Virus record (IMG/VR): IMGVR_UViG_3300046542_000227
Coordinates: 124,001-188,000 of that record
Reading direction: 5' to 3' (one strand)
DNA length: 64,000 nt
The notes beneath the pieces are model-generated. The model ran no database searches and was not told where the DNA came from. It was given only the letters and a program-made list of their open reading frames with translations. Each line of letters opens with the position of its first letter. Positions within the stretch are counted from its first letter, which is position 1. Positions 20,893 through 63,048 of this stretch are shown piece after piece. Both the position numbers and the translations under genes were made by a program.

Positions 20893-23373
20893 TTAGACGG
20901 AGCACCCGCCGGAAGTACAGACAGGACCGCTGGTGTCGAGGCCATCATCTTCAGCCACTTCACGACGTACCCGTGCCATTACCCCAGCCAACGCCTCTTT
21001 GTCAGACGAATCACTGTTGGTGTAGTACACAGTCTTCTGACCGAGGTGCGCTGCGTAGTTGGTTTCTTCGATCAGGTCGCTGGAGCTAACCTTCTCATCG
21101 CCCTGGAAGGTAGCGTACCAGTCTGCCGAGATCGACATGTCGGTCCACTTCTGGAAGATCGCGTAGGTTTCCGAATGCTGACGACGCGTACGGTTCCAAG
21201 CGATGGAGTACCATTCTTTCAGGGTGTCGGCTTCTGGAGCAACCCAAAGCATCGAGTTGTCACCGTCGGTCTTGGTGATCGACAGTTCACGCAGGTCCAT
21301 GATCGAGTTGGTGCAAGCACTGTACTTGGACGACGACTCACCTGGCATGTAGCAGATCAGGCTGGAGAAGCGACCACCACCGTTGTCAATCAAACGCTGG
21401 GAAACTTCAGGCCAGTCGTATTGGTTAACGAACGGAGCGAGAGCATCGACATTACGGTTGTAAGTCGTTTGCGGAGTCCAGCCACGTGGCCAGTCGGTCT
21501 TGTGGATCCACTCAGCATTGCCACGCTCTTGACCCAAACGGATCGAAGCGTTGATCAAGTGGTACGCATGACGTTCAGCCATGCGATGCAGCTCCTGCAT
21601 GCCTTCTACAGACGTGTACGACAGCTTACGCTGAGCCATGTAGTGGGCAACGTCCATCAAGCCTACACCAGCGTTACGGCGCGCTTGAGCAGTGAGCTTC
21701 ATGTGCGGCAACGCGTAGTTGTTATGGTCGATGCAATAGTCAACCATGTACAGAGCGTTATACGACGTCTCGGCGTACTGCTCTTCGGTGTGGATGTTCG
21801 TTGGGATCAGTGCGGCCAAAGCACAGAGCGATACTTCAGGCTCTTGACGCTTCTCGATCACTTCAGTTACACGATGGTAAGTGAAGGAACCTTTCAAGCG
21901 GAACTCAACACCTGGCTTGAGTTCCAGTGCCGCAACGGCACCAGGGAAGCCACGGATCTCGACCGGTACGTTCGAGTCGAGGAACATGCCTTTCTGCTCA
22001 GCGGTATCGAACTTGATGAAGCCCATGAACTTGGTGCTGTTAAGCTCCATGAAGTTATCATAGTGCCAAGTCGGTTGAGTTACCTCAACACACAGGTTCG
22101 ACGACAGGATCTGATCACGGTGTGGCGTGTGGAAGTTGATCTCATCGATCATGGCCAGATAGAAGCGACCAGTCTCGAAGCCTTCGGAGCGGGCATTGAC
22201 TACCAGCTGACGGGCCGAGATCCAGATCTTCTTGAAGGCCGGGTCTTGTTCGTAGCGCTCGTAGATGGCGATGAACTCATTGAGGTCTTTGCCGTACAGC
22301 GCACGGTACAGGTCTGGTGCGGTGTGGATGTTGAACAGGAACACCTGCTCATCAGCCGCCGACTTCGACAGCAACCAGCGGTTGAGCATCATCGTGTAAT
22401 CGATGCTACGGTTACGCTTGTTGATCGGGGTACGTGGATTCTTCAGAACCATGATCTCGACCACTTCTGGGTCGTAGGCGCTGAAGAACTCGTTCAGGCT
22501 GCCGCCACGGCTGCCTTGCTTGTTCGACTTAACGATACCGGTTTGCTTACCGTAGTACGGAATCTTGCCGGAGTGGATAATGCTACCACCACGGATTGGG
22601 TCACCGAGGCTACGCACCTGCATGTTCTCGCCCAGACCTGCGGACATGTAGGTCATGACTTCAGCAATAACTGAAGAAGCCGTGATCGACTCTTTGGTAT
22701 CGCTGCAGGTAAACAGGCAGCATGAGAAGAAGCCATTGTGGCCAGTGCCCATGTTGTTGTGGTTCGGTGTAGGAGCCGACAGACGCTCGTTAGCCAGATC
22801 GCTGTAGAACGATTCCAGACGGGCCATACGAGTAATCGGGTCATGTGGTTCGCAAACCACCATAGCTACACGAGCCAGTGCATGCTGACGGGTTTCGTAG
22901 ATGCGACCGGTCAGACGGTTGCGCAGGGCATATTTGTCGCGACCCTGCTTGAGCTGGTAATGCGCACAATGGAAATCACGTTCGTGATCAACCCACTTCT
23001 CGATCTGCGCGTACTCTTCTTCGGAGTAGTTCAGCTCAACCAGGACGTTAGCGGCTTGCATGACAGTGTGCACTTCACGCAGCGTCAAACGCTTCTTGCT
23101 GCCAAAGACTTCCTTATGGATGTCGGTGGCGTAGATACGACCAGCCATGAGCTGACCGGCCCAGGTGTTCTCATTCAGGGCATTACGGATAAGGCCGTTG
23201 TTGAATTCTTTCGCGTGGCAGCGCTCAGGCATCTGAGCTACTGTTGCTACGACGATCTTTTGCCAGTCGATAAACTTAGCAAACCCCTTGGCTCCCCATT
23301 TCCCCCAGCCAAGTGCCTTACCGGCATCGAACGATACCACAGTACCATCGCGTTTGATGAACTCTTTAATCAT
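20893..23373 (-). CDS. nrdA: Ribonucleotide reductase class Ia alpha subunit
   Basis: ATP-cone start IKRDG, SAPTP, FSCCL, SNLCVE, MPGESSS and C-terminal CxxxxC. Confidence 0.95.
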   Translation of the reverse strand: MIKEFIKRDGTVVSFDAGKALGWGKWGAKGFAKFIDWQKIVVATVAQMPERCHAKEFNNGLIRNALNENTWAGQLMAGRIYATDIHKEVFGSKKRLTLREVHTVMQAANVLVELNYSEEEYAQIEKWVDHERDFHCAHYQLKQGRDKYALRNRLTGRIYETRQHALARVAMVVCEPHDPITRMARLESFYSDLANERLSAPTPNHNNMGTGHNGFFSCCLFTCSDTKESITASSVIAEVMTYMSAGLGENMQVRSLGDPIRGGSIIHSGKIPYYGKQTGIVKSNKQGSRGGSLNEFFSAYDPEVVEIMVLKNPRTPINKRNRSIDYTMMLNRWLLSKSAADEQVFLFNIHTAPDLYRALYGKDLNEFIAIYERYEQDPAFKKIWISARQLVVNARSEGFETGRFYLAMIDEINFHTPHRDQILSSNLCVEVTQPTWHYDNFMELNSTKFMGFIKFDTAEQKGMFLDSNVPVEIRGFPGAVAALELKPGVEFRLKGSFTYHRVTEVIEKRQEPEVSLCALAALIPTNIHTEEQYAETSYNALYMVDYCIDHNNYALPHMKLTAQARRNAGVGLMDVAHYMAQRKLSYTSVEGMQELHRMAERHAYHLINASIRLGQERGNAEWIHKTDWPRGWTPQTTYNRNVDALAPFVNQYDWPEVSQRLIDNGGGRFSSLICYMPGESSSKYSACTNSIMDLRELSITKTDGDNSMLWVAPEADTLKEWYSIAWNRTRRQHSETYAIFQKWTDMSISADWYATFQGDEKVSSSDLIEETNYAAHLGQKTVYYTNSDSSDKEALAGVMARVRREVAEDDGLDTSGPVCTSGGCSV

Positions 23374-38857: not shown

Positions 38858-40924
38858 ATGGCATCTATCAACTCGACGCCGCGGATCGTTTACGGCGGCA
38901 TCAACGACAAGTCCCGTGGGACTCCGTCGCGGGCACCGATCACTTACCCGCAGCACGCGCCTCTGTTGCGCCTGTGGTGTGAAACCGGTACCGACAAAAC
39001 CGTTTTTCTCGGCAACGAGAACAGCGACTTCAATACCATGTTCGGTGCGCAAACGCTGGCTCGTCGTGGTAAGTTCTTTAACCTGCAATCGCTGCTGGCA
39101 GAAACCCTGCTCGGCGCCGGTAACGGTTTCTTCGTTAAGCGCCTGATTCCTCAGGATGCCAAGAAGTCCCGTTTGATCGTAGGTCTGGAAATCGTTCGTG
39201 ACGATATCCCGGCTCTGCTGGAGCGCCTGTCGGGCTTCAACTACAACGGTCAGATCCCGGCTCAGAACGCTGATCCACTGCCTCCTATCGATGGCCTGCG
39301 CGCACGTATTGTCGTCGTGCCAGCTACCGGTGAGCCAGGTACTGCCGAAGTTATGCCCGGCACCCTGTTGGCGGAGAAGGATGGCACTCAAGCTGACATC
39401 TATCCACTGTTCGAATTGCCTGCCTCGTACTTCGGTGCCAGCGGTAACAACCTGGGCATCCGTGTCTGGGCTCCGAACGACAAGACCAACGAAGTCTGGG
39501 ACGAGGCTACGGCCGAGACCTTCAAGACCCGTATGTTCCGCATGCAGTTCATGCAGAAAGTCGCCAACACCAACATCCCGGCCATCGTGCTGACGGCGTT
39601 CGGTGAAGACTACGTTGATGTGTGCTTCACTCCTGGTGCGTACAGCGCTACCACGGACAAAGAGTACTACCTCGGCGACACGCTGATCAAAGCCTACAGC
39701 GACGACGGTATCGAGTCGGGCCTCGCGCCTCTGACTTCCCCGTTCAGCAAGGTCTACGTCTACGACGAGCACATCAAAACTGTGCAAGACCTGATCTACG
39801 CTCGTGAACTGGCCAACAACCCAGCTCTCGCAGCGAGCGTTACCCAGTCGAGCCAGATCGATTTCCTGACCGGCACTGGCACCGACGGCGACCTGTACCA
39901 ATCCTTGTACCTCCTGGGTGCTCTGGATGGCGGTATCGTGTTGGGCGACGGCACCACCGTTTACGCTAAAGGCGGCGAAGACGGCACCATGACCCACGCT
40001 GCTTATGAAGAGCTGGTGACTGTTGAAAACACCGCGTTCGGCCAACTGGGCGATCTGTACGAGAACACCGCGCTGTATCAGTTCTCGCACATTTACGACA
40101 CCGGTCTGTCGATGGAAGGCAAGTTCGCAATGATGAACGTGCTGGGCCAACGTCGTGACCTGAAGACCATCTTCACTACCTACGTCGAATCCGAACAGCG
40201 TGCCCCGACTCTGTCGGAAGAGCTGTCTCGCGGCCAGGTTCTGATGACCCGTCTGAAGGCCTATCCGGAATCGACTCTCTACGGCACCGGCATCTGCCGC
40301 GCCGAAGTCATCTATCAGACCGGTGAGCTGATGGGTGGTGGTTACAGCAAGCCTGTGCCACAGATCATCGACTACGCGAACAACTGGGCGAAGTTTGCTG
40401 GTGCTGGCACCGGTATCCTGCTCGATGGCGCTGACATCGATATCGACCCGAACAACATGGTCACCTTGGTGAAGAACCTGAACGTGCCGTACTTCCCGGC
40501 CCGTGCTCAGTCCAACGCCTGGGAATCCGGTGGTACCTACTCGTTGACGTACGACACGCGTAGCAACTACTACCCTTGCGTGCGTTCGGTTTACCAGGAC
40601 GAGACTTCGGTTCTCCTGTCGCCGATCACCACCAACATCGCCTGCGACATCGTGCGCCAGATCATCCGCATTCACCAGAAGTTCTCTGGTAACGCGAAGC
40701 TCACCAAAGAGCAGCTGATCGAGCGTTCCGACAAGGAGATCCTGCGTATTGTTGAAGGTCGTTACGCTGGCCGGGTGCAGATCCGTCCAGAGACTTACAT
40801 CAACGATGCCGATGCCAACAATGGTGTGACCTGGCACTGTAAAGTGCGGTTGTACGCGAACAACCCTCGCACCACCATGTTCTTCGAACTCGAAACCTAT
40901 CGCATGGACGCCCTGGCCGAGTAA
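38858..40924 (+). CDS. Tail sheath protein (phiKZ gp29-like)
   Basis: 688 aa, N-terminal INSTPRIVYGGINDKS, strong codon bias, followed by tube gene. Confidence 0.88.
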   Translation: MASINSTPRIVYGGINDKSRGTPSRAPITYPQHAPLLRLWCETGTDKTVFLGNENSDFNTMFGAQTLARRGKFFNLQSLLAETLLGAGNGFFVKRLIPQDAKKSRLIVGLEIVRDDIPALLERLSGFNYNGQIPAQNADPLPPIDGLRARIVVVPATGEPGTAEVMPGTLLAEKDGTQADIYPLFELPASYFGASGNNLGIRVWAPNDKTNEVWDEATAETFKTRMFRMQFMQKVANTNIPAIVLTAFGEDYVDVCFTPGAYSATTDKEYYLGDTLIKAYSDDGIESGLAPLTSPFSKVYVYDEHIKTVQDLIYARELANNPALAASVTQSSQIDFLTGTGTDGDLYQSLYLLGALDGGIVLGDGTTVYAKGGEDGTMTHAAYEELVTVENTAFGQLGDLYENTALYQFSHIYDTGLSMEGKFAMMNVLGQRRDLKTIFTTYVESEQRAPTLSEELSRGQVLMTRLKAYPESTLYGTGICRAEVIYQTGELMGGGYSKPVPQIIDYANNWAKFAGAGTGILLDGADIDIDPNNMVTLVKNLNVPYFPARAQSNAWESGGTYSLTYDTRSNYYPCVRSVYQDETSVLLSPITTNIACDIVRQIIRIHQKFSGNAKLTKEQLIERSDKEILRIVEGRYAGRVQIRPETYINDADANNGVTWHCKVRLYANNPRTTMFFELETYRMDALAE

Positions 40925-40958
40925 TCGGCCAGTTCGTTCTTCACAAGGGTAAATACCA

Positions 40959-41825
40959 ATGGATCGTTACAGCAGTCCGTTTATCGGTCAGAACGGTTAT
41001 GGCCGGGGCCAGTCCCCGGGCACTATCAACCTGGCTCAAGCCGGTACCCACACCATGGCACCGGATCTGGCGAACATCGCCAGTAACACACCACTCGTCG
41101 CACGGAACCTGGTACCGTTCCTCATCGAGCCGCCACGGTTCTTTGAATTCTTGCCGAACCGCGAACTGGCAGTCCGCTGCCTGAAAGCGTTCATCGAGAA
41201 GCACACCCGCACCATCAACGGTCTGAACCAGCAGATCTCGGTCGACACTGCCGATAACCCCTACGGTGGTTCCGGTGAAGCGATCAAGGTTGCGACCAAC
41301 GTTACCCGTGCCCAGTCGAACCCAACCTTCGGTGGTTGGGAACTGCAAGGCCGCGCGGTTACCCGCTTCATCAAGTGGTGGATCCAGTACGGTATTGGTG
41401 ACGAAAACACCAAGATCCCTCTGGTGGTAGCCGATGGTGCAGTACGGGCCGATCAGTATGATGCATCGTTCTACGGTGCTACCATCCTGTTCGTTGAACC
41501 GGACGCGTCCTTCTCCGAGCCGATCTCGGCTTGGTTGGGTACCAACATGTTCCCTCTGGCGACCCCGCCTTGGGAAGGTCGTAAGGATGCTGGCCAGTTG
41601 GGTCAGAACCTGGAGTTCGATATCGAGTTCTCCATGGTCTCCGACGTTTCTGTGGGCACTACCATCTTCGCTCGCGAAATGATGCGCTCCCTGAACCTGC
41701 GTGGCATGAACCCGAACGATCGTCGTCTGTGGTTCACCGGCGTTAGCGCCGACGTGGCAGCTGCTCAGAATGGCCTGCAACAGCAGCTCACTGAAGGCGC
41801 TGCTGCTCGTCAGAACGTTGGTTAA
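40959..41825 (+). CDS. Tail tube protein (phiKZ gp30-like)
   Basis: 288 aa directly after the sheath. Confidence 0.85.
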   Translation: MDRYSSPFIGQNGYGRGQSPGTINLAQAGTHTMAPDLANIASNTPLVARNLVPFLIEPPRFFEFLPNRELAVRCLKAFIEKHTRTINGLNQQISVDTADNPYGGSGEAIKVATNVTRAQSNPTFGGWELQGRAVTRFIKWWIQYGIGDENTKIPLVVADGAVRADQYDASFYGATILFVEPDASFSEPISAWLGTNMFPLATPPWEGRKDAGQLGQNLEFDIEFSMVSDVSVGTTIFAREMMRSLNLRGMNPNDRRLWFTGVSADVAAAQNGLQQQLTEGAAARQNVG

Positions 41826-43077: not shown

Positions 43078-44313
43078 TTAGCGTTTGGTGTAGTAATCTT
43101 TCGTCATCGCACGCAGCACGATATACAGAAGGGTCCCGGTTCGCACAGCTGCGATCTGGGCCTCGTATTTATTCCGTCCCGTGGCTTGACGCACCAGCTT
43201 CTCAGCTTCAGTACGCAACAGCATTACCGATGGGTCGGTGGAACGCGAGGCTGTCAACAGTGCTTTGAGTTTGGCGATGTTGGTAGCAAGGTCATTACGC
43301 TGAACCGAAGGTAGACGGTTTACATAAAGGTGATCGAAGGAGTAGAGCAGCACTTCCTTAACGATCTCTTGCAGGTAGTTCTGATGCGGGGCGAAGTAGT
43401 TGTTCGACATGTAACGCAGTGTCGTAACCAACAATGGCTTCGGCATCGTGTTCATACCCGACGCTACGACGTCTACAAGCTCGTCTCGGATGAAGTTGCG
43501 CTCAGATGGGATAATGTCATTGATGTACCGCATAAACGACGCATAGCCGTTCTTACGGTCTTTGAGCACCATCTCACCATCAGCGTTGATCGTGGTATCT
43601 GACGTGGTCTTCACTCGCACGCCAGTGTCACTGAAGTGTTTGTGGATCGCGTAGATCTTCTTGATCAATTCACGGATACGAGATTGGGTATCGGTAACCG
43701 TACGGATCAACATGCCGTCTGGCTGGAAGTCCTGCAGGCAACGATAGTAGATCGACTTGGCCGACACAATGTCTTCAGCACGAGCACGGATCAAATCACG
43801 CCACGAACCATAACGACGAATGTCGAAACGACCGTTGAGGGCGAGGTAGGTCGCTGTCGCAACCTCTTTGTCTGCTGGGTACTGGAACCGCTTCACCAAC
43901 AACGAGGTGATAAAGCGATAGTGTAGAACCATGTACGCATGCACCATAGCCTCATGGCGCAACGATTGGGCAACACCCGTGGCTTTCATCAACCGATGGA
44001 CGATGTAGGCTGGTGTGTAGTTGAAGGCGTCACTCATGACGTTGAATTCATGGTTGATCGCATCGATCTTACGGAAGTCCGCAAGAAACAGATCTTCGTC
44101 GACTTCCAGTACGTCTTCGTACCAGCTGTCTCGGTCACTGTCAAAGAATTTGACGGGGTTAACCCCCAGGAGAACACCACCAAAGAAAGCAGAGTGGTCT
44201 TCATTACGGTTCATGAAACGGATGGAGTACTGAATCACCCGCTTACAGAACTCGGCATCGAATTTAACGTGATCGAATTGACGATCAAATACCTCTTTAA
44301 TCGTAACGCCCAT
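43078..44313 (-). CDS. Conserved virion protein (phiKZ gp32-like)
   Basis: 411 aa; size and position after tube gene. Confidence 0.65.
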   Translation of the reverse strand: MGVTIKEVFDRQFDHVKFDAEFCKRVIQYSIRFMNRNEDHSAFFGGVLLGVNPVKFFDSDRDSWYEDVLEVDEDLFLADFRKIDAINHEFNVMSDAFNYTPAYIVHRLMKATGVAQSLRHEAMVHAYMVLHYRFITSLLVKRFQYPADKEVATATYLALNGRFDIRRYGSWRDLIRARAEDIVSAKSIYYRCLQDFQPDGMLIRTVTDTQSRIRELIKKIYAIHKHFSDTGVRVKTTSDTTINADGEMVLKDRKNGYASFMRYINDIIPSERNFIRDELVDVVASGMNTMPKPLLVTTLRYMSNNYFAPHQNYLQEIVKEVLLYSFDHLYVNRLPSVQRNDLATNIAKLKALLTASRSTDPSVMLLRTEAEKLVRQATGRNKYEAQIAAVRTGTLLYIVLRAMTKDYYTKR

Positions 44314-44417
44314 GTCCCTGTACCGGTTGGGTTAAAAGTTCACAAGATTGAGCAGTCTCAAAAACAATACAAACCTAGATTATCCTCATGTTAAACAATC
44401 CACGCGAGGGCTTGATT

Positions 44418-44678
44418 ATGGATCTCTTCGATCTGGAACGTGAAGTAGCTGAACAAGAGAATGTACGCATTGCATTCATCCACCCCGAAAAGGACTTGGT
44501 GTTGACCAATTCCTATCGAACCCTGCATCCAGTTGCCTTGCCCGATGGCGCTGACGACAGCATGTTGGTAGACCGTGTTATTGACGTGGTGGGTCACGGT
44601 CGTCCATTCATGCTGTTGCTGGAAAACGAAGCCACTGTCTTCAATACCAAAACAGCACCACAAAAACAACTCAACTAA
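44418..44678 (+). CDS. Hypothetical protein
   Basis: GAGG RBS places start at 44418. Confidence 0.55.
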   Translation: MDLFDLEREVAEQENVRIAFIHPEKDLVLTNSYRTLHPVALPDGADDSMLVDRVIDVVGHGRPFMLLLENEATVFNTKTAPQKQLN

Positions 44679-44691
44679 GTAAGGGTTTCAC

Positions 44692-45459
44692 ATGGCTGAT
44701 AGCAAGCGGATTTTGATTCCATGGTCGGGTGGTGCCGACTCTACGTTGTTGATCGCCGAAGCACTACGTGCCAAAGATCGCATTTGGTACTGTACCTTCG
44801 AAGCGGGCCAACCTAATACCCAGATCATGGCAGAAGCAGTAGCTCGGGAAAAGTTAGAGGAACGGCTCAAGCGGCGTTTCGCTGAAGCGCCAGAGATGCA
44901 CCTACACCGGAGCAAACTGGTGTTGGATACCAGCGGTACCAACTTGCCGATGAAACAGCTTCCAGCATGGTTCATGCACTTGATCACCATGGTTGCTGAC
45001 AAAAGTGGTCAGTTCTATTTCGATGAGATCCATCTGGGTTACTTGCTCAACGATGATGCTGCCTATTCGCTTAGCAATTTGAAGTTAGCTTGGCACCACA
45101 TGTGTCTGGCTGTCTACGGGATTGACCGTGATCCACCGAAGCTGATGTTCCCATTGCTGCGTTATCGCAAAGGGCAAGTGTTGGCTGAGTTAACTCAATT
45201 GGGTCTGATCGACCTGATTTCGATCTGTGAGCTACCCCAGCTCTATGACGACGGTTGGCGTCAGTGTAACGAATGTCCATCCTGCCATAAACACAACACC
45301 GCCAAGGCCGTAGACGATCTGCACAATGGCATGCGCTGGCGTGGTGACTTGTTGGTTGATTACGATCACCGTACTAAACCGAATCCTGAACTGGTTGATG
45401 AAAGTCAACTTACCGAATACCCACTCGAAAAGGAAGCTACCTGTGAACAAACGTCTTAA
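44692..45459 (+). CDS. QueC-like PP-loop ATPase with C-terminal zinc site
   Basis: WSGGADST PP-loop; SIC-x12-CNECPSC zinc cluster as in QueC. Confidence 0.75.
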   Translation: MADSKRILIPWSGGADSTLLIAEALRAKDRIWYCTFEAGQPNTQIMAEAVAREKLEERLKRRFAEAPEMHLHRSKLVLDTSGTNLPMKQLPAWFMHLITMVADKSGQFYFDEIHLGYLLNDDAAYSLSNLKLAWHHMCLAVYGIDRDPPKLMFPLLRYRKGQVLAELTQLGLIDLISICELPQLYDDGWRQCNECPSCHKHNTAKAVDDLHNGMRWRGDLLVDYDHRTKPNPELVDESQLTEYPLEKEATCEQTS

Positions 45460-46213
45460 CGTAATGACCACCCTGGGCCAACTGCTGTCGATGCATATCG
45501 CTGACTACGCACGTGGTCGTGCTGGCCGCGCCCCCAAGCTGTCGATCCATGGCAAGCAGCAGAACATCAAGATGCAGTTCCAGATCCATGAGAAAGTCGT
45601 GGGTGAGTTGGTACTGGTCTGCCCGAAGAACGACCCGGATCCAGAGAACTACGTCGGCCGCTTCGGGAACTGGGATGTGACGCTGCCTGAGACCGAGGAC
45701 TGGGCACATGCGATCCGTAAGCTGCCACATGCCAAGCGTCAGGAACAGCGTGACTACTGGGCAGCTATGGACATCCTGTACATGATGGCCATGGTGGGCT
45801 TTAAGGTCGTTACCTTCGACGGTAAGAACAGTCACATCCATGCGGCTGGTGTATTGGCACCGGGTGGCGCTGAAGGCTATGGTCGTTTCCATTTCAACTT
45901 CAACGTAACTACGGCGTATGACTCACACCGCAACTTCTACGGTCAACACGGTGGTGCAATGCCTGTCCTACCGGATCACCTGAAGACGGATGAAGACCGT
46001 CAGGCTGAGATCAGTGCGGCGCTGCAGGATCCATCGACAGAAGTCGTACGAGTTGTACCTGGTGTTGAAGCTATTCACACCATCCGTGGTCGTGAGACCG
46101 GTGTGGTAACATTCGGCGCAATGGACCAGGTGACGCCTGAAGAAGCAATCCAGATCCAACAGGCGATTGCCACCGGTGGTTCTTATGAGGGTACCAAGAA
46201 TGAACCAGCCTGA
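45443..46213 (+). CDS. Hypothetical protein
   Basis: GTG start with AAGGAAG RBS, overlapping the QueC-like gene end. Confidence 0.6.
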   Translation: MNKRLNVMTTLGQLLSMHIADYARGRAGRAPKLSIHGKQQNIKMQFQIHEKVVGELVLVCPKNDPDPENYVGRFGNWDVTLPETEDWAHAIRKLPHAKRQEQRDYWAAMDILYMMAMVGFKVVTFDGKNSHIHAAGVLAPGGAEGYGRFHFNFNVTTAYDSHRNFYGQHGGAMPVLPDHLKTDEDRQAEISAALQDPSTEVVRVVPGVEAIHTIRGRETGVVTFGAMDQVTPEEAIQIQQAIATGGSYEGTKNEPA

Positions 46214-46619
46214 TCCATGCCAACTCACCAGAGCGCATCTCGACCAGTTCATGGACAAGCTGGCTGCACGTGCTCCATTCCGTAAAAGCATTGTGGTACC
46301 ACGTGACGATGGTCGTCGCGGTAAGGTGTTCCGCACCCAATGCGATGGCATCGAGATGGTGATGCCCTTACCACCAGGTGAGTACGTGGAACAACCGCCC
46401 GAATGGCAAGGATCAGTACCGCATCCAAAGGCTATGTACTACGACCCGCGATCGTTCGGTACTGCGCCGTACGAACCTGACCTAATCAGTCATATCGACG
46501 TGGTCGATGCGGCTGGTAACCGGGTAGATGTTGCTGCTGTACCGCAGCGCTATTTGATTGCCGAGTTCGAATCCGCGCCGCGCGCCGCGTCCGAAGTTTT
46601 GGCTAAGGGCGATGAGTAG
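46200..46619 (+). CDS. Hypothetical Pro-rich protein
   Basis: GAGG RBS, overlaps upstream gene. Confidence 0.55.
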   Translation: MNQPDPCQLTRAHLDQFMDKLAARAPFRKSIVVPRDDGRRGKVFRTQCDGIEMVMPLPPGEYVEQPPEWQGSVPHPKAMYYDPRSFGTAPYEPDLISHIDVVDAAGNRVDVAAVPQRYLIAEFESAPRAASEVLAKGDE

Positions 46620-47030
46620 CGCTTCGCTAATGTGAGTGTTTCCTTAAACACTTATCCATTACCAAGGGTTTCTGTTCTTTAGGGATTGACAGAATAAAGA
46701 CAGAGGGGGTAAACCCCTCTGATCTTATTTTGTTTTTTGATTTAAAGAGAAAATAAAAATACTAGATATATAGATTAATTGGGGGAGGGAGCCGGTTAGG
46801 CGACCGACTCCCAATTAATATCCTTATTCTTTAGTAATAACCCCCCTCCCCCTGTTTGGGGGGTCTTATTCCGTGTTGGGGTAAATCCACGAGTGAGTGA
46901 CAAAACACTCACCGTGTTAATCTCATACGGCAAAAAACCCTTCCCGAAGGAAGGGCTAGCTTTCGCTACAGATGGGTGCCCTGACAAATGGATACCCGAT
47001 TCCCAACCAAAGGAACATATCATTAAGGAT
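46620..47030. other. AT-rich intergenic region with clustered hairpins
   Basis: At least five inverted repeats plus an A/T tract at ~46720-46780. Confidence 0.7.
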
Positions 47031-47035
47031 TCGCT

Positions 47036-48025
47036 ATGCAAACGTGTGTTGTAGCCATCGTGGGTTTGGAGTTCACCGATAACTTCCGTCATCTGCCGCC
47101 AGTATTCGAAAAGCAACTCGGTGACGAAGACGTGCGCTTTCTGATCCACTCGACTCCGGTGACAGAACAACACAACGGTCGCTTGGTGTGCAACTACGAT
47201 CTACTGCTGGACGTGGGTTATGAAACCGCTCATCCGAAAGCGGACTACGTTTCCAAACGTTTGAGCAAGACCGATCAAGCCATTGAACTGGCGAGCATCG
47301 CTGCTGAGATCGGTGCACGGCATTTCGTTCCAGTTCCGGTACTGAGCAAGAAACCCAACCCGACCAATATCTACGACATGCTGCACATGCCACCGCTGGT
47401 GCTCATCAAGCCAACCGATGGGGCACGTGGTGTGGGACACATTGTGTTCGATAACACCAAAGCGAGTATGTTCAGGTTCTTGAACGAGTTGCGTAACCGT
47501 AGCCCAGAAGGTACGGTTGAGGAAGTCTTGGCCAAATACGCTGACGCCATCGAGCTCCACAATGGAACCTCGAACTATCCTGGCGAAGCGGCCTACATGT
47601 TGACCAGCCAATCGCTGATGGTCACTGGCTTGATCCGTGGCATCACCCAAGAAGTTCGTGTGGTTACCAATGCACATAGCGAAGCGACGTTGGTCAAAGT
47701 ACGTGAGCGTAAGAGCAACGTAGATCCAGCGTACGACAAGCAAGGTAAGTACGAACAAGCCACCGGCGCTAATCGTGATAACGACAGCCTGTACTACGAC
47801 CTCGATAGCGTGATTGCTAACGTCGATGTGTTGGCTGAAGTCAAAGCAATGCTCAAGCGACTGCCACCTCTGAACTCGGTGGACCTGTTCTTCAATGAGC
47901 GGGGTTGGGGTATCTTCGAATACTGCAACCAGTTTGGTACCGAAGCCTTCGAGATCGATGACTCGGTCAATCTACACACCAACCTGTTGGCGTCATTGTA
48001 CCTGAAGAAATTCAAACCAGAATAA
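47036..48025 (+). CDS. ATP-grasp fold ligase (RimK/GshB-like)
   Basis: LIKPTDGARGVG, EVRVV, SVDLF and IFEYCN match ATP-grasp motifs. Confidence 0.7.
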   Translation: MQTCVVAIVGLEFTDNFRHLPPVFEKQLGDEDVRFLIHSTPVTEQHNGRLVCNYDLLLDVGYETAHPKADYVSKRLSKTDQAIELASIAAEIGARHFVPVPVLSKKPNPTNIYDMLHMPPLVLIKPTDGARGVGHIVFDNTKASMFRFLNELRNRSPEGTVEEVLAKYADAIELHNGTSNYPGEAAYMLTSQSLMVTGLIRGITQEVRVVTNAHSEATLVKVRERKSNVDPAYDKQGKYEQATGANRDNDSLYYDLDSVIANVDVLAEVKAMLKRLPPLNSVDLFFNERGWGIFEYCNQFGTEAFEIDDSVNLHTNLLASLYLKKFKPE

Positions 48026-48483: not shown

Positions 48484-49482
48484 ATGCAACAAGCACAATT
48501 GCCAGCAGTACCAAAACTCGCCATCTTCTGTGCCGGTGCTTTCGGTATCACCACGGGCCTGCGTCAGCCTCAGAATGCTGATACCCGGGTTACCTACATC
48601 GACACCAGCGAAGCCAACCTGACCAGCGACATCGACGACGCCAAGTGCTACCGCATTCCAATGCCACCGGAAGCCGATGGTCGTGTAGTACGTGGCGGTG
48701 GTGGTCAAGATCGTCGCCGTACGGCCAAAGCGGCAATGCCACACATCGCTCCGATCCTGGAGCGTTTCGTGCCTGGCGCATTCAACCTGCTGGTGTTCTC
48801 GTGCTCGGGTGCATCCGGTTCGGTTATCTGCTCGTTGCTGGCTCGTCAACTGTCGGCCGCTGACCACAGCTTCCTGCTGCTGTGCGTTGGCGAAACCACC
48901 ACCACGAAATACCTGACCAACACCCGGGATACCTGGAAAGGTCTGGAGAACATGGCGCTGTCGACTGGCCGCCCATTCGTGATGTCCTACCACCACAACC
49001 GTCAAGGCGTGCCACAATCGGCCGTGGACCAAGATGTCGACTTCGTGATCGAAGCCGTCACCGCCCTGACCTGCCAGTTCAACAAAGACCTGGACGCCAG
49101 CGACATCCACAACGCCCTGAACTTCAACAACGTGACCTCGGTGCCACCACAACTGGCCACCATCTCGATCAGCGACAATCGCAAGACTGCCGCCGCCGTC
49201 ATGGAACCGATCACCCAACTGTCGCTCTACTGCGATCGCGACGAAGCCAGCGTCATCGGCACGCCGCATTACAGCAAGTTCGGCTACCCACAAGAACCAC
49301 TGGTCAGCGCTTTCGATCAGCTGCACTTCATCGTCAACACCATCTCGGTCGACGAGATCAGCAAAGATCTGCGTGAAGCCGAAACCGTGCAACAACAAGC
49401 TCACGGCAACTATCGCAAGCGCGCTGCGCTGGTGAATGTCCGTGATGACGAAGTGACCGCCGACGGCCTGGTTCTGTCTTAA
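48484..49482 (+). CDS. phuZ: Phage tubulin PhuZ
   Basis: CAGAFG, IDTS, GGGQDR, SGASGS signature variant, T7 loop LDASD, acidic C-tail DDEVTADGLV. Confidence 0.9.
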   Translation: MQQAQLPAVPKLAIFCAGAFGITTGLRQPQNADTRVTYIDTSEANLTSDIDDAKCYRIPMPPEADGRVVRGGGGQDRRRTAKAAMPHIAPILERFVPGAFNLLVFSCSGASGSVICSLLARQLSAADHSFLLLCVGETTTTKYLTNTRDTWKGLENMALSTGRPFVMSYHHNRQGVPQSAVDQDVDFVIEAVTALTCQFNKDLDASDIHNALNFNNVTSVPPQLATISISDNRKTAAAVMEPITQLSLYCDRDEASVIGTPHYSKFGYPQEPLVSAFDQLHFIVNTISVDEISKDLREAETVQQQAHGNYRKRAALVNVRDDEVTADGLVLS

Positions 49483-60883: not shown

Positions 60884-61094
60884 AAAAAGAATTACACGTC
60901 GTAGTGTATAGTATGTGAACTAGCATATGGTTCATCGCACCTTTGGTGTATGTTCCTATGCTGCCGACATTTAGGTCTTTTTACCTACCCCACAGAAAAG
61001 TGGAATTAAAAATACCTGAAGCCTATATCACGTAGAAGAATAACCGCAATCGGTTACGCTTACGTATATACCCAACCAAAAGGAAACAAGAGTC

Positions 61095-62969
61095 ATGGCA
61101 ATTCAAGACGAAGAGAATGGCGCACAAAACAACGGCCAGCAATCGGCTCCGGGCACCATGGGTACTCAGAACCCGTACAACGGCACTGCTGAACAGTCTC
61201 AGGCCCGCGCCACTCACCTCGGTGATGTGAACAGCCTGCTGGCTCGTGGCGGTAAAGCCGATAACACCGAAGGCCGCTCCGGCGAACTGCTGACCGCTCT
61301 GACCCTGAACGGTAAAGAAGCAGTTGCAGCTCAGAACCTGACCCCGGACTTCGAACTGGTTCGCTTCGATCGCGATCAACATCGCGTCGGCGTCGGTGCC
61401 ATCCTGGTACTGCGTGCGTACCGTAAAGGTGCCGATACCTACATCGCTGTTCGCCCACTGCTGGTCGACAACAAGCAGGTTTCGCTCAAGCCTCGCATCC
61501 TGACCATCGGTCAAGAGCGCCTGGAAATCCCTACCTACGTCGCCGACGTACTGTCCGACGAATACTGGAACCGTATCACTCGCCACGTGCAAGACCACGT
61601 TGCCAACCCGAAGGCGATCGTCGCCAACGCTGGCTACCTGGAAGTACCGAGCGACTTCGACGTGTCCGACAAGAACTCGGCCGACGTTACCAAGCTGTTG
61701 TCCGTATCGGTCAACCGCTGCGACGACGTGCTGGCTCGCGTTAACGGCGAAACGCCTTTCAACATCGCTGTCTTCAAAGCAGCGAACGAAGTGCTGACCG
61801 CCAAGCTGGACTTCTCCGGTACTCCGCGCACTGACCTGTTCGGCCAACCGATCCGTTCCGACATCCAGGTGTCCATGAACCGCAGCATCCGCGGCAACGC
61901 TGAAGCTGATCCGTTCTACGACGCTGACACCCAGTTCTCCTCGGTGAGCTGCTACGTCAACCTGGAATACGCACCGGCCAACGCCCCACAAGGCTACGCT
62001 CCGGCTGCCGTAATGGAAACTCAGCTGTTCACCCCGACCATCGTCATCACCGACGTACGTCAGGCCAGCTGGATCGGCGCCAACACGCCTGAGCTGTACT
62101 TCCTGGCTCTGTCCAACGCCTACCGCACTACCGCTGGTACTGCATGGGCCGGCAGCCTGCTGCCAGACGTTGCCAAGAAAGACGACCCACGCGACATCGG
62201 TGCTCTGACCTACCTGACCAAGGACGCGAAGAAGACCAAAACCAAAACCGATACCTTCACCCCGGCTCACTTCGGTGAACTGATGTTCATGCTGGTTCGT
62301 CCTAACCCGACGTTCCTGATCGACATCAACCCGGTCGGCGAAAACTCGGCAATCGAAAACGTCCTGCTGATGGCGGCCAGCGATGGTCCGAACCGTGAGC
62401 GCGCCGTAGCGATCCTGGTATCGAGCCTCAACAACCTGACCGCTGGCCACTTCAGCCAGATCTTCGACCACACCAAGCACCACTTGATCCGCATGTACGG
62501 CACCGACGTACACCGCGGCTACTACCTGGACGCACGCGAAGATCGTCACGATCTCCGTGACCTGGGCACGCTGGAAGCGCTGAACGCATCGGGTGGCAAC
62601 ATCCAAGAGTTCATCGCCTACTACCGTACCATGTGCGACCAAGCGATCCACCCGGAAATCCGCCTCAAGCAGCGCGTCGGTTACGAGCGTCAGTACCTGA
62701 GCCAGAACCTGGTGATCCGCGGCAAGTACCACCGTCTGGTCTGGACTCCTGAGTTCATCCTGGCGCTGGACAATGCGGTTAAAGCTGCAGGCGTATCCGT
62801 CGACGTGGAAAACGTGAGCACCGTTTACGGTTCTCAGCGCTTCACCGGCAACACTGCTGTTACTCAGTTCGCTGTGGCTCAACAAGCACAGTACGGCCTG
62901 GGTGCCAACGCAGGTCAGGGCGGCTACGGTCTCCCAGGCGGCGCCGGTGCTGGTACCATGATGTACTAA
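61095..62969 (+). CDS. chmA: Chimallin, phage nucleus shell protein (phiKZ gp54 / 201phi2-1 gp105-like)
   Basis: 624 aa, own early promoter and terminator, strongest codon bias in the window, directly upstream of the nvRNAP beta-prime gene; assignment mainly by size and synteny. Confidence 0.85.
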   Translation: MAIQDEENGAQNNGQQSAPGTMGTQNPYNGTAEQSQARATHLGDVNSLLARGGKADNTEGRSGELLTALTLNGKEAVAAQNLTPDFELVRFDRDQHRVGVGAILVLRAYRKGADTYIAVRPLLVDNKQVSLKPRILTIGQERLEIPTYVADVLSDEYWNRITRHVQDHVANPKAIVANAGYLEVPSDFDVSDKNSADVTKLLSVSVNRCDDVLARVNGETPFNIAVFKAANEVLTAKLDFSGTPRTDLFGQPIRSDIQVSMNRSIRGNAEADPFYDADTQFSSVSCYVNLEYAPANAPQGYAPAAVMETQLFTPTIVITDVRQASWIGANTPELYFLALSNAYRTTAGTAWAGSLLPDVAKKDDPRDIGALTYLTKDAKKTKTKTDTFTPAHFGELMFMLVRPNPTFLIDINPVGENSAIENVLLMAASDGPNRERAVAILVSSLNNLTAGHFSQIFDHTKHHLIRMYGTDVHRGYYLDAREDRHDLRDLGTLEALNASGGNIQEFIAYYRTMCDQAIHPEIRLKQRVGYERQYLSQNLVIRGKYHRLVWTPEFILALDNAVKAAGVSVDVENVSTVYGSQRFTGNTAVTQFAVAQQAQYGLGANAGQGGYGLPGGAGAGTMMY

Positions 62970-62990
62970 GTACCAGACCACGGTAATAAA

Positions 62991-63023
62991 GAGAGGACCT
63001 TCGGGTCCTCTCTCTCTTTTTTT
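62991..63023 (+). terminator. Intrinsic terminator after chmA
   Basis: GAGAGGACC-TTCG-GGTCCTCTC followed by a T7 tract. Confidence 0.85.
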
Positions 63024-63048
63024 GCCCTCCGACACAAAAGGACCAAGT

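What the first reader, a model, noticed from the sequence alone, without database searches (positions are those of the whole stretch)
44692..46619. Orphan QueC-like enzyme in a tightly coupled operon with unknown genes
No folE, queD, queE or dpdA is visible in this window, and a nucleus-shielded genome has less need for 7-deazaguanine DNA modification. QueC-family proteins also act in defence systems (QatC, type IV CBASS Cap9), where protein modification has been reported. This enzyme and its overlapping 45443 and 46200 genes could be an undescribed counter-defence or protein/RNA-modification module.
Basis: inference. Interest (0 to 1): 0.6.

Follow-up and report, generated by a model that had tools for sequence, protein, structure and literature searches.

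The report
Orphan QueC-like enzyme cassette, jumbo phage
A nucleus-forming jumbo phage from soil carries a lone, remodelled relative of the queuosine enzyme QueC, tightly coupled to unknown partner genes; it belongs to a large phage-only enzyme family that never comes with the DNA-modification pathway, so it almost certainly does something other than make preQ0 for DNA, but what it does is still unknown.

Summary
Window 44692-45459 encodes a 255-aa protein with the QueC fold. It overlaps a 256-aa gene (GTG 45443) by 17 nt, and that gene overlaps a 139-aa gene (ATG 46200) by 14 nt. An 86-aa ORF (44418-44678) precedes them and a terminator (46701-46721) follows.

The complete 267-kb genome has chimallin and PhuZ. 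It has no FolE, QueD, radical-SAM/QueE or TGT/DpdA.

The enzyme is not a canonical QueC: it scores 30 bits on TIGR00364 against a cut-off of 150. It keeps the SGGxDS loop, the four zinc cysteines and the equivalents of E. coli QueC Q37, E42 and K165. It lacks Y35, R99, the Asp-Cys of YPDC and Y189, residues needed for preQ0 synthesis.

It belongs to a large, essentially phage-only family (PHROG 1550). Of 28 large phage records that carry this family, none has DpdA and one has QueD.

The partner gene B is specific to Noxifer-like phages, where it follows the enzyme in 9 of 9 loci. Gene C is a split-off middle piece of B. Alleles of the enzyme gene are swapped between otherwise near-identical phages while staying under purifying selection.

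My best reading is an ATP-dependent adenylating ligase with a non-canonical, probably macromolecular substrate, in an accessory cassette. The substrate and any counter-defence role are untested.

The parts
44418..44678 (+). Small ORF (86 aa) that opens the cassette. The longer 96-aa reading from 44388 is probably too long.
   Evidence: It is 96.5% identical over residues 11-96 to the 86-aa genes just upstream of the QueC-like gene in L011 and L012, and 40% identical to the 85-aa gene in L015. It has no Pfam family. It ends 13 nt before A.
44692..45459 (+). Gene A: QueC-fold PP-loop ATP pyrophosphatase (255 aa) of the phage-only PHROG 1550 branch, with a remodelled substrate pocket.
   Evidence: dN/dS is about 0.1-0.2 against the alleles in L011 and L012.
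45443..46213 (+). Gene B: partner protein (256 aa) specific to the Noxifer-like clade. Its N-terminal domain (about residues 1-160) is conserved; its C-terminal half is poorly modelled and variable.
   Evidence: The start overlaps A by 17 nt. A B-like N-domain lies directly downstream of A in all 9 distinct relatives' loci that have DNA. It has no family or fold match.
46200..46619 (+). Gene C (139 aa): a split-off homologue of the middle part of the long (593-800 aa) B proteins of relatives.
   Evidence: The motif FGTA..ISHxDVVDAAGNRVDV aligns with L002, L003 and Noxifer B. C is kept as a separate ORF in L011 and L012. It overlaps the end of B by 14 nt.
46701..46721 (+). Intrinsic-terminator-like hairpin with a T-run. 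It ends the cassette and opens a 416-nt AT-rich, hairpin-rich spacer (46620-47035).
   Evidence: 8-bp stem with 6 G-C pairs.
43078..44313 (-). Left anchor of the variable slot: homologue of the phiKZ gp32 head protein (411 aa).
   Evidence: 50% identity to phiKZ gp32, E 4e-146. It occupies the same position in all relatives.
48484..49482 (+). Right anchor of the slot: PhuZ tubulin.
   Evidence: PF22334 TubZ_C_2, E 1.8e-27. 62.5% identity to Noxifer PhuZ.

Best explanation
Gene A encodes an apparently active member of a large, phage-restricted branch of the QueC / PP-loop ATP-pyrophosphatase superfamily (PHROG 1550). It is not a preQ0 synthase serving a phage 7-deazaguanine DNA-modification pathway.

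Shown:
- A has the QueC/Cap9 fold, with the ATP pyrophosphate loop and the zinc ribbon intact.
- The residues that canonical QueC and Cap9 use to hold 7-carboxy-7-deazaguanine are replaced or deleted.
- The family occurs almost only in phages and without pathway partners.
- In Noxifer-like nucleus-forming phages, A is the enzyme of a small cassette (86-aa ORF, A, B, C). The cassette sits in the variable slot between the gp32-like head gene and PhuZ, where phiKZ carries unrelated accessory genes.
- Alleles of A are exchanged between otherwise near-identical phages and remain under purifying selection.

Inferred:
- Like every PP-loop enzyme, A adenylates a carboxyl or carbonyl oxygen with ATP and passes the activated group to a nucleophile (amide ligation or amination).
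- The remodelled pocket and the longer zinc-ribbon lid (12 residues between the first two Cys, against 8 in QueC and 19 in QatC) point to a different, probably macromolecular, substrate.
- The translationally coupled protein B, with its split-off piece C, is the likeliest partner or acceptor in this clade. This would follow the Cap9-CdnD and QatC-QatB precedents, in a host-takeover or counter-defence role.
For: Fold: Cap9 Z 16.2, QueC Z 16.0 and 15.5, QatC Z 12.8; Foldseek agrees.

Motifs, from hhalign against E. coli QueC (Prob 95.6) and HMMER against 3BL5:
- Kept: SGGxDS, Q37, E42, K165 and the four Cys. N100 is conservatively replaced by the invariant Q89.
- Lost: Y35, H39, R99, the D133-C134 of YPDC, and Y189 (now Glu, as in the Cap9 'CE' motif).
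- Y35A, R99A, Y131A and Y189A abolish E. coli QueC function (PMC13329287).
- TIGR00364 scores 30 bits against a cut-off of 150.

No pathway:
- Own complete genome.
- Noxifer and RSF1 have no TGT/DpdA.
- 0 of 28 large phage records with this family have TGT/DpdA, and 1 of 28 has QueD.

Family size and range:
- 820 representative clusters at E<=1e-10, but only 10 at E<=1e-30.
- 44 of 44 sampled members match phrog_1550.
- Only 8 hits, all on MAG contigs, in genomes of 185,579 prokaryotic species.
- The nearest Atlas clusters are viral.

Cassette and synteny. phiKZ has unrelated genes gp33-gp38 at the same place.

Selection and mosaicism:
- Nucleotide identity to L012 and L011 is 90-99% in the flanks and 51-82% inside A.
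- For A, dS is 1.1-2.1 and dN about 0.2. For the flanks, dS is 0.29-0.49 and dN 0.015-0.028.
Against: - No substrate is identified.
- B, C and the small ORF do not start with the Met-Gly-(Gly/Thr)-Ser motif that Cap9 and QatC substrates need.
- More distant family members have no B-like neighbour: RSF1, L013 and L014. B therefore cannot be the family's general substrate.
- In L012, A differs by 29% in protein while B differs by 5%. This argues against a tightly co-evolving A-B interface.
- In about half of the other viral loci the gene follows an SNF2 helicase, which hints at nucleic-acid metabolism rather than protein modification.
- The B model is poor (pLDDT 57).
Confidence: 0.5

Rival explanations
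1. A is still a working CDG-to-ADG/preQ0 synthase. It draws on the host's FolE/QueD/QueE products to raise queuosine supply, for instance for the phage's own tRNA-Tyr(GUA) and tRNA-Asn(GUU), or for host tRNAs during infection.
For: - QueC fold with the zinc site.
- Q37, E42 and K165 equivalents are kept.
- An aromatic residue (Y125) aligns with Y131 in this protein and in most of the wide family.
- The genome encodes tRNA-Tyr(gta) and tRNA-Asn(gtt), two of the four queuosine tRNA types.
Against: - Y35, R99 and Y189 are replaced, and the Asp of YPDC that reads the guanine edge is deleted. Single Ala changes at Y35, R99, Y131 and Y189 inactivate E. coli QueC (PMC13329287).
- Y125 is kept in only 7 of 12 close relatives.
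- The equivalog model scores a fifth of its cut-off.
- The host already has QueC.
Confidence: 0.1
2. A is a counter-defence enzyme aimed at QueC-based immunity (type IV CBASS Cap9/Cap10, QatABCD). It would either consume or divert the shared precursor, or capture or mis-modify the N-terminal tail of the host's CdnD or QatB.
For: - Cap9 is among the best structural matches (Z 16.2, tied with QueC), and A shares its 'CE' zinc-ribbon start.
- The family is phage-only.
- The cassette lies in a variable accessory slot.
- A alleles are swapped between near-identical phages, a pattern common in arms-race genes.
Against: - The CDG-binding residues are not kept.
- There is no experimental or contextual link to Qat or CBASS hosts.
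- PADLOC models match the PP-loop only.
- dN/dS of 0.1-0.2 shows allele exchange, not positive selection in place.
Confidence: 0.12
3. A modifies a nucleic acid base (tRNA, rRNA or DNA), in the manner of ThiI, TilS, MnmA or TtuA, or acts on a free guanine nucleotide as YcfA does. On this reading B is unrelated to its chemistry.
For: - YcfA (Z 15.2), ThiI (Z 13.8), TilS/MesJ, NcsA and MnmA (Z about 12) follow QueC closely.
- In about 40 of 80 other viral loci the gene sits behind an SNF2 helicase, and in one locus beside topoisomerase II.
- The invariant aromatic and acidic residues W93, Y117 and D121 could hold a base.
Against: - There is no RNA-binding domain such as THUMP.
- The zinc ribbon is of the QueC/Cap9 type.
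- There is no Fe-S cluster motif and no sulfur-relay partner.
- The window shows no nucleic-acid context.
Confidence: 0.15
4. A is a catalytically dead remnant kept as a scaffold or virion component.
For: Several canonical active-site residues are missing. The gene lies among virion genes: sheath, tube and the gp32-like gene.
Against: SGGxDS, E48, K160 and all four Cys are invariant or nearly so across a family of hundreds of clusters. Purifying selection is strong.
Confidence: 0.03

Closest known systems
Canonical QueC (7-cyano-7-deazaguanine synthase; E. coli b0444, B. subtilis 3BL5, TIGR00364)
   Same: Same Rossmann-like PP-loop fold with a C-terminal four-Cys zinc ribbon (Z 16.0 and 15.5). 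SGGxDS and the equivalents of Q37, E42 and K165 are kept; N100 is conservatively replaced by Q89.
   Different: 17-19% identity. It scores 30 bits against the 150-bit equivalog cut-off. Y35, H39, R99, D133-C134 and Y189 are lost. The zinc lid is four residues longer. There is no queD/queE neighbour, and none anywhere in the genome.
Cap9 of type IV CBASS (9NTO chain B)
   Same: Among the best structural matches, tied with QueC (Z 16.2, 177 of 181 residues). Both are small single-domain enzymes. The zinc ribbon starts with 'CE' and there is a 'FP/PF(x)4-5K' motif (motifs from PMC13329287). Both are encoded next to a possible protein partner.
   Different: Cap9 keeps the canonical CDG-binding core (Y/FxQ, RN, YxDC) and this protein does not. 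There is no CD-NTase, Cap10 (TGT-like) or Cap11. The neighbour has no N-terminal MGGS. It is phage-encoded rather than part of a defence system.
QatC of QatABCD (9Y01/9Y02)
   Same: A QueC-family enzyme with a remodelled substrate pocket, a lengthened zinc-ribbon lid and an uncharacterised partner protein encoded alongside. The reaction of QatC is likewise unknown (PMC13279940).
   Different: QatC has N- and C-terminal extensions of about 20 kDa that are absent here. The structural match is lower (Z 12.8). The QatC motifs (D(x)4R(x)7WxR, the invariant Thr pair) are not present. There is no QatA or QatD. B has no MGTS and no detectable likeness to anything.
PHROG 1550, 'QueC-like queuosine biosynthesis' (e.g. 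Ralstonia phage RSF1 ORF153, Vibrio phage YC, Burkholderia phage S13 gp155; Pseudomonas phage Noxifer gp027 is annotated hypothetical)
   Same: This is the family the protein belongs to: 70 bits, 44 of 44 sampled relatives, 48% identity to Noxifer gp027 and 31% to RSF1 ORF153. The shared signature is SGGxDS, E48, Q89, W93, Y117, D121, FP, K160 and CE-P...CxxCxxC.
   Different: The family's name is an annotation by homology, and I found no functional study. The Noxifer-like subclade adds the B/C partner, the conserved CELPQLYDDGW lid and a conserved YDHRT tail motif.

Membership tests
Canonical QueC (preQ0 synthase) | SGGxDS pyrophosphate loop | tested here: met
   S12-G-G-A-D16-S17; nearly invariant in the family.
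Canonical QueC (preQ0 synthase) | Four-Cys zinc motif C(x)8CxxCxxC | tested here: met
   C179, C192, C195 and C198 are invariant, but the spacing is C(x)12C.
Canonical QueC (preQ0 synthase) | YxQxHxxE motif (Y35 essential in E. coli) | tested here: not met
   The aligned stretch is AGQP...E. Q40 and E48 are kept; Y35 becomes A38 and H39 is not conserved.
Canonical QueC (preQ0 synthase) | VPxRN motif (R99 essential) | tested here: not met
   hhalign puts K88-Q89 at R99-N100, and position 88 is K or T among close relatives. HMMER puts W93-F94 there. Either way the Arg is absent.
Canonical QueC (preQ0 synthase) | YPDC motif (Tyr stacks on CDG, Asp reads its edge) | tested here: not met
   Y125 may match the Tyr, but only in 7 of 12 close relatives. 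D-C-R falls in a 3-residue deletion.
Canonical QueC (preQ0 synthase) | Score above the equivalog cut-off, and a queD/queE/folE context | tested here: not met
   TIGR00364 scores 30 bits against 150. None of these genes is in the complete genome.
Canonical QueC (preQ0 synthase) | Converts CDG to preQ0; complements a queC mutant | not testable with these tools
   Needs an enzyme assay or a complementation test.
Phage 7-deazaguanine DNA modification (dpd-type) | DpdA/TGT-family transglycosylase in the same genome | tested here: not met
   No PF01702 match in the own genome, in Noxifer or RSF1, or in 28 other large phage records with this family.
Cap9-type protein deazaguanylation (type IV CBASS) | CD-NTase substrate with an N-terminal MGGS, plus Cap10 (TGT-like) | tested here: not met
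   B starts MNKRLN, C starts MNQPDP and the small ORF starts MDLFDL. There is no TGT. No cassette ORF starts MG[GTSA][ST].
Cap9-type protein deazaguanylation (type IV CBASS) | Canonical CDG-binding core retained (Y/FxQ, RN, YxDC) | tested here: not met
   motif list from PMC13329287.
QatC (QatABCD) | N- and C-terminal extensions (about 400 aa in all), QatB with MGTS, qatA/qatD neighbours | tested here: not met
   The protein is 255 aa. PADLOC QueC matches residues 4-51 only and no Qat model matches. The neighbours have no family.
PHROG 1550 (phage QueC-like) | Significant full-length match to the family profile and the shared signature residues | tested here: met
   E 2.7e-19 over residues 4-206. 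The signature is shared with 43 diverse members.
PP-loop ATP pyrophosphatase superfamily | Rossmann-like fold with an N-terminal SGGxDS after strand 1 | tested here: met
   The model has strand 6-10, then the loop, then helix 15-26. The top 50 structural matches are PP-loop enzymes.

The most novel reading that the evidence does not exclude
The cassette would be a virus-encoded, QueC-type, ATP-dependent conjugation system. Enzyme A would attach a small carboxylate (a 7-deazapurine or another metabolite) to a protein, either its partner B/C or a host protein. The purpose would be to take over the host or to disarm QueC-based immunity. This would be the first viral case of the nucleobase-protein conjugation chemistry so far known only from bacterial defence. 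It would give a function to a phage enzyme family of many hundreds of clusters.
Probability: 0.15. Interest if true: 0.85.

Novelty: new variant of a known kind. Interest (0 to 1): 0.55.

Why it matters
QueC-fold enzymes were recently shown to do more than make preQ0. Cap9 and probably QatC modify proteins in anti-phage defence, and the reaction of QatC is still unsolved. This work shows that phages hold their own large, separate branch of the fold. That branch is consistently uncoupled from the deazaguanine pathway and has a different substrate pocket, and databases label it 'queuosine biosynthesis' by homology alone.

The label is very probably misleading for DNA-modification predictions in jumbo phages. 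The family is an unexplored enzymatic activity of large phages.

A cultured relative exists: Pseudomonas phage Noxifer on P. fluorescens SBW25, genes gp027/gp028. The question is therefore directly testable.

Tried and rejected
- Complex prediction of A(1-232) with B(1-160): no verdict (ipSAE 0.01). I do not use it for or against binding.
- Fold of B: the model is weak (pLDDT 57). The best PDB match is Z 5.5, within noise. The Atlas shape search gives TM below 0.3 and the Atlas feature search finds nothing.
- phiKZ Dip (gp37) appeared at Z 4.3 and lies in the syntenic slot. hhalign and BLAST show no relation of B or C to phiKZ gp33-gp38, so I rejected it.
- phiKZ gp33 as a hidden QueC-like protein: rejected.
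- B-like neighbours of distant family members (RSF1 ORF151-155, the L013 and L014 neighbours): none.
- Pfam, PHROG, NCBIfam and PADLOC scans of B and Pfam and PHROG scans of the long B proteins gave only sub-threshold noise. So did those scans of C and the Pfam scan of the small ORF.
- Rfam on 44000-47200: nothing.
- Megablast against cultured phages: nothing.
- Programmed frameshift joining B and C: I saw no slippery site at 46150-46213 by eye (no formal search). The split is conserved in relatives 62-95% identical in B, so I read them as two coupled genes.
- Positive selection on A: rejected, because dS is saturated as well. The pattern is allele exchange.
- The first pattern scan with alignment A3 failed because it was too diverse. 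I repeated it with A4.
- Literature searches found no functional work on phage QueC-like proteins of this branch.
Full report
**1. What is there**

The window is bases 124001-188000 of a complete 267,320-bp virus record with direct terminal repeats.
- A: 44692-45459, 255 aa.
- B: 45443-46213, 256 aa, GTG start.
- C: 46200-46619, 139 aa.
- A and B overlap by 17 nt, B and C by 14 nt.

The GTG start of B is confirmed because relatives begin with the same MNKRLN(x)MTTL.

An 86-aa ORF (44418-44678) ends 13 nt before A. It is 96.5% identical to the 86-aa gene in the same position in two relatives and 40% identical in a third. A terminator-like hairpin at 46701-46721 follows C. The unit is therefore four genes.

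Pieces of exactly this A allele occur in soil metagenomes of two further studies. The probable source sample is a rhizosphere metagenome.

**2. The phage**

The flanking genes are:
- the phiKZ-type tail sheath and tube (38858-41825);
- a gp32-like head protein on the minus strand (43078-44313, 50% identity to phiKZ gp32);
- PhuZ (48484-49482);
- a chimallin homologue (61095-62969, 39% identity to phiKZ gp54).

The nearest cultured relative is Pseudomonas phage Noxifer, with PhuZ 62.5% identical.

**3. Is it QueC?**

By fold, yes.
- The AF2 model has pLDDT 78.6.
- It matches Cap9 (9NTO_B, Z 16.2, rmsd 3.2, 177 residues), B. subtilis QueC (Z 16.0) and Erwinia QueC (Z 15.5).
- Next come YcfA (Z 15.2), ThiI (Z 13.8) and QatC (Z 12.8). 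Foldseek agrees.

By family rules, no.
- Pfam QueC gives only 30.7 bits.
- The NCBIfam equivalog TIGR00364 gives 30 bits against a cut-off of 150.

I aligned the family profile to E. coli QueC (hhalign Prob 95.6) and to 3BL5, and read the result against the catalytic signature defined by mutagenesis in PMC13329287.
- Kept: SGGxDS, Q37 (Q40), E42 (E48), K165 (K160) and all four Cys. N100 is conservatively replaced by the invariant Q89.
- Lost: Y35 (Ala here), H39 and R99 (Lys or Thr in close relatives; HMMER instead aligns an invariant Trp).
- Also lost: the Asp-Cys of YPDC, which falls in a three-residue deletion, and Y189, which is Glu as in the Cap9 'CE' motif.
- The zinc-ribbon lid is C(x)12C, against C(x)8C in QueC and C(x)19C in QatC.

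Y35A, R99A, Y131A and Y189A each abolish E. coli QueC function (PMC13329287). In Cap9 the equivalent Tyr, Asp and Arg hold the deazaguanine (bioRxiv 10.1101/2025.04.06.647259). The canonical way of binding CDG is therefore not preserved.

**4. Is it orphan?**

Yes, at three levels.
- The own complete genome has no TGT/DpdA, FolE, QueD or radical SAM enzyme, and a single QueC match.
- Noxifer and Ralstonia phage RSF1, which carry homologues, have no TGT/DpdA either.
- Of 28 IMG/VR records of at least 100 kb that carry a member of the same family, none has TGT/DpdA. That includes none of the 14 that are at least 90% complete. One has QueD.

Only 6 of those 28 have chimallin. The orphan state is a property of the enzyme family, not a consequence of the phage nucleus.

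**5. The family**

A word search found only 11 relatives. A full profile search found 1,831 representative clusters at E<=0.001, 820 at E<=1e-10 and only 10 at E<=1e-30.

All 44 sampled members match PHROG 1550, 'QueC-like queuosine biosynthesis'. They share the signature SGGxDS, E48, Q89, W93, Y117, D121, F153-P154, K160, C179-E180-x-P182 and CxxCxxC.

The family is essentially viral.
- A pattern scan of genomes of 185,579 prokaryotic species gave 8 hits, all on MAG contigs.
- The nearest Atlas clusters are Uroviricota.

In about 40 of 80 other viral loci the gene follows an SNF2 helicase and a ~120-aa ORF.

I found no functional study of this branch. The 2026 survey of PF06508 does not treat it.

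**6. The partners**

In every relative of the tight clade for which DNA is held, A is followed at once by a gene with the B N-terminal domain. There are nine distinct loci: the window, L002, L003, L005, L009, L011, L012, L015 and Noxifer. The overlaps are 4 to 17 nt, or about 240 nt in the Noxifer type.
- B proteins range from 252 to 800 aa.
- Only the first ~160 residues are conserved (invariant residues include S34, H36, G37, G54-E55-L56, W87, D104, W106, G147-R148-F149).
- C corresponds to the middle of the long B proteins (FGTA..ISHxDVVDAAGNRVDV).
- The split into B and C is conserved in relatives 62-95% identical in B. I saw no slippery site by eye (no formal search), so I read them as two coupled genes.

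B has no family and no convincing fold match.

More distant family members (RSF1, L013, L014) have no B-like neighbour.

phiKZ has unrelated genes (gp33-gp38) in the same slot between gp32 and PhuZ. gp37 is the RNA-degradosome inhibitor Dip; that function is from my own knowledge, not from a tool. The slot therefore holds accessory genes.

**7. Evolution**

Against L012 and L011, nucleotide identity is 90-99% across the gp32-like gene and the small ORF. It falls to 51-82% from about 60 nt into A up to the start of B, and returns to about 90% in B of L012.

| Region | dS | dN |
|---|---|---|
| A | 1.1-2.1 | about 0.2 |
| Flanks | 0.29-0.49 | 0.015-0.028 |

Old, divergent alleles of A are therefore exchanged as a cassette, and each remains under purifying selection (dN/dS 0.1-0.2). 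This shows that the protein is functional. It fits a gene under diversifying pressure at the population level, but it does not prove an arms race.

It also shows that A can change by 29% while B changes by 5%. That argues against a tightly co-evolving interface.

**8. Mechanism**

Shown:
- an intact ATP pyrophosphate loop, an intact zinc ribbon and the conserved Glu and Lys of the fold;
- a remodelled pocket;
- no pathway partners;
- a partner gene specific to the clade.

Inferred:
- A adenylates a carboxyl or carbonyl group and transfers it to a nucleophile, as all PP-loop enzymes do.
- The substrate is not CDG bound in the canonical way.
- Given the longer lid and the Cap9 and QatC precedents (PMC13279940), a macromolecular acceptor is the likeliest, with B/C as first candidates in this clade.

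Against this:
- No cassette protein has the N-terminal Gly motif.
- B is not a family-wide neighbour.
- The helicase context elsewhere hints at nucleic-acid metabolism.
- The complex prediction gave no verdict and is not used.

I put about 0.9 on 'not a canonical preQ0 synthase and not part of a DNA-modification pathway'. I put about 0.5 on the whole best explanation and about 0.15 on a true protein-conjugation or counter-defence system.

**9. Novelty**

The gene family is already catalogued and (mis)named by homology, so the bare presence of a QueC-like gene is known. What is new:
- the evidence that this is a separate, phage-only branch with a changed active site;
- the finding that it is orphan throughout;
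- the Noxifer-clade cassette with B/C;
- the allele swapping.

I rate it a new variant of a known kind, of moderate to good interest. It is directly testable in Noxifer on P. fluorescens SBW25.

Noticed in passing
own genome, outside the window: G000:C1 75110-75184, 77150-77234, 77236-77311: The phage encodes three tRNAs: Gln(ttg), Tyr(gta) and Asn(gtt). Tyr and Asn are two of the four tRNA types that carry queuosine at position 34. This may be a coincidence beside an orphan QueC-like gene, but it is worth a look.
   Followed up: partly
window 44750-45443 compared with L012 and L011: There is a sharp mosaic boundary. Identity to two related contigs drops from 90-99% to 51-82% exactly over gene A (after its first ~20 codons) and recovers at the start of B. 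Both dS and dN are raised, so whole alleles of A are being exchanged.
   Followed up: yes
L007 (Pseudomonas phage Noxifer NC_041994.1) record 23049-23278; L003 6707-6945: In Noxifer-type relatives the B homology starts 180 nt upstream of the annotated gp028 start. It overlaps the 3' end of the QueC-like ORF by about 230-240 nt in another frame. The annotated gp028 start is probably too late, and the long C-terminal tail of gp027 may be an incidental read-on.
   Followed up: partly
window 46620-47035: This is a 416-nt AT-rich spacer after gene C with several G+C-rich hairpins (46701-46721, 46844-46863 and others seen by eye). It has no Rfam match.
   Followed up: partly
L017 196-2649, L049 154-2979 and about 40 other viral loci: In many other large phages the QueC-like gene follows an SNF2-family helicase and a ~120-aa ORF with overlapping ends. 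Some of these helicases carry Hint/LAGLIDADG intein signatures.
   Followed up: partly
window 61095-62969: A chimallin (phage nucleus shell) homologue, 39% identical to phiKZ gp54. An antisense 670-aa ORF (61023-63035) over it is presumably spurious.
   Followed up: partly
window 43939-44394 (+): A 151-aa ORF lies antisense to the 5' part of the gp32-like gene. It has no family and no counterpart called in relatives, so it is probably not a gene.
   Followed up: partly
L009 B residues 373-406 and own genome G000:C1 249556-249657 (-): A ~34-residue stretch of one relative's long B protein resembles a segment of this phage's DnaB-like helicase ORF (47% identity). It also gives a weak divDNAB/DnaB PHROG hit. 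The window's own C does not share it.
   Followed up: partly
window 45350-45380 (A residues 220-228): A short motif (LL..YDHRT) is conserved in the otherwise poorly modelled C-terminal tail of A, only in the Noxifer-like clade. It may be a docking or regulatory peptide.
   Followed up: no
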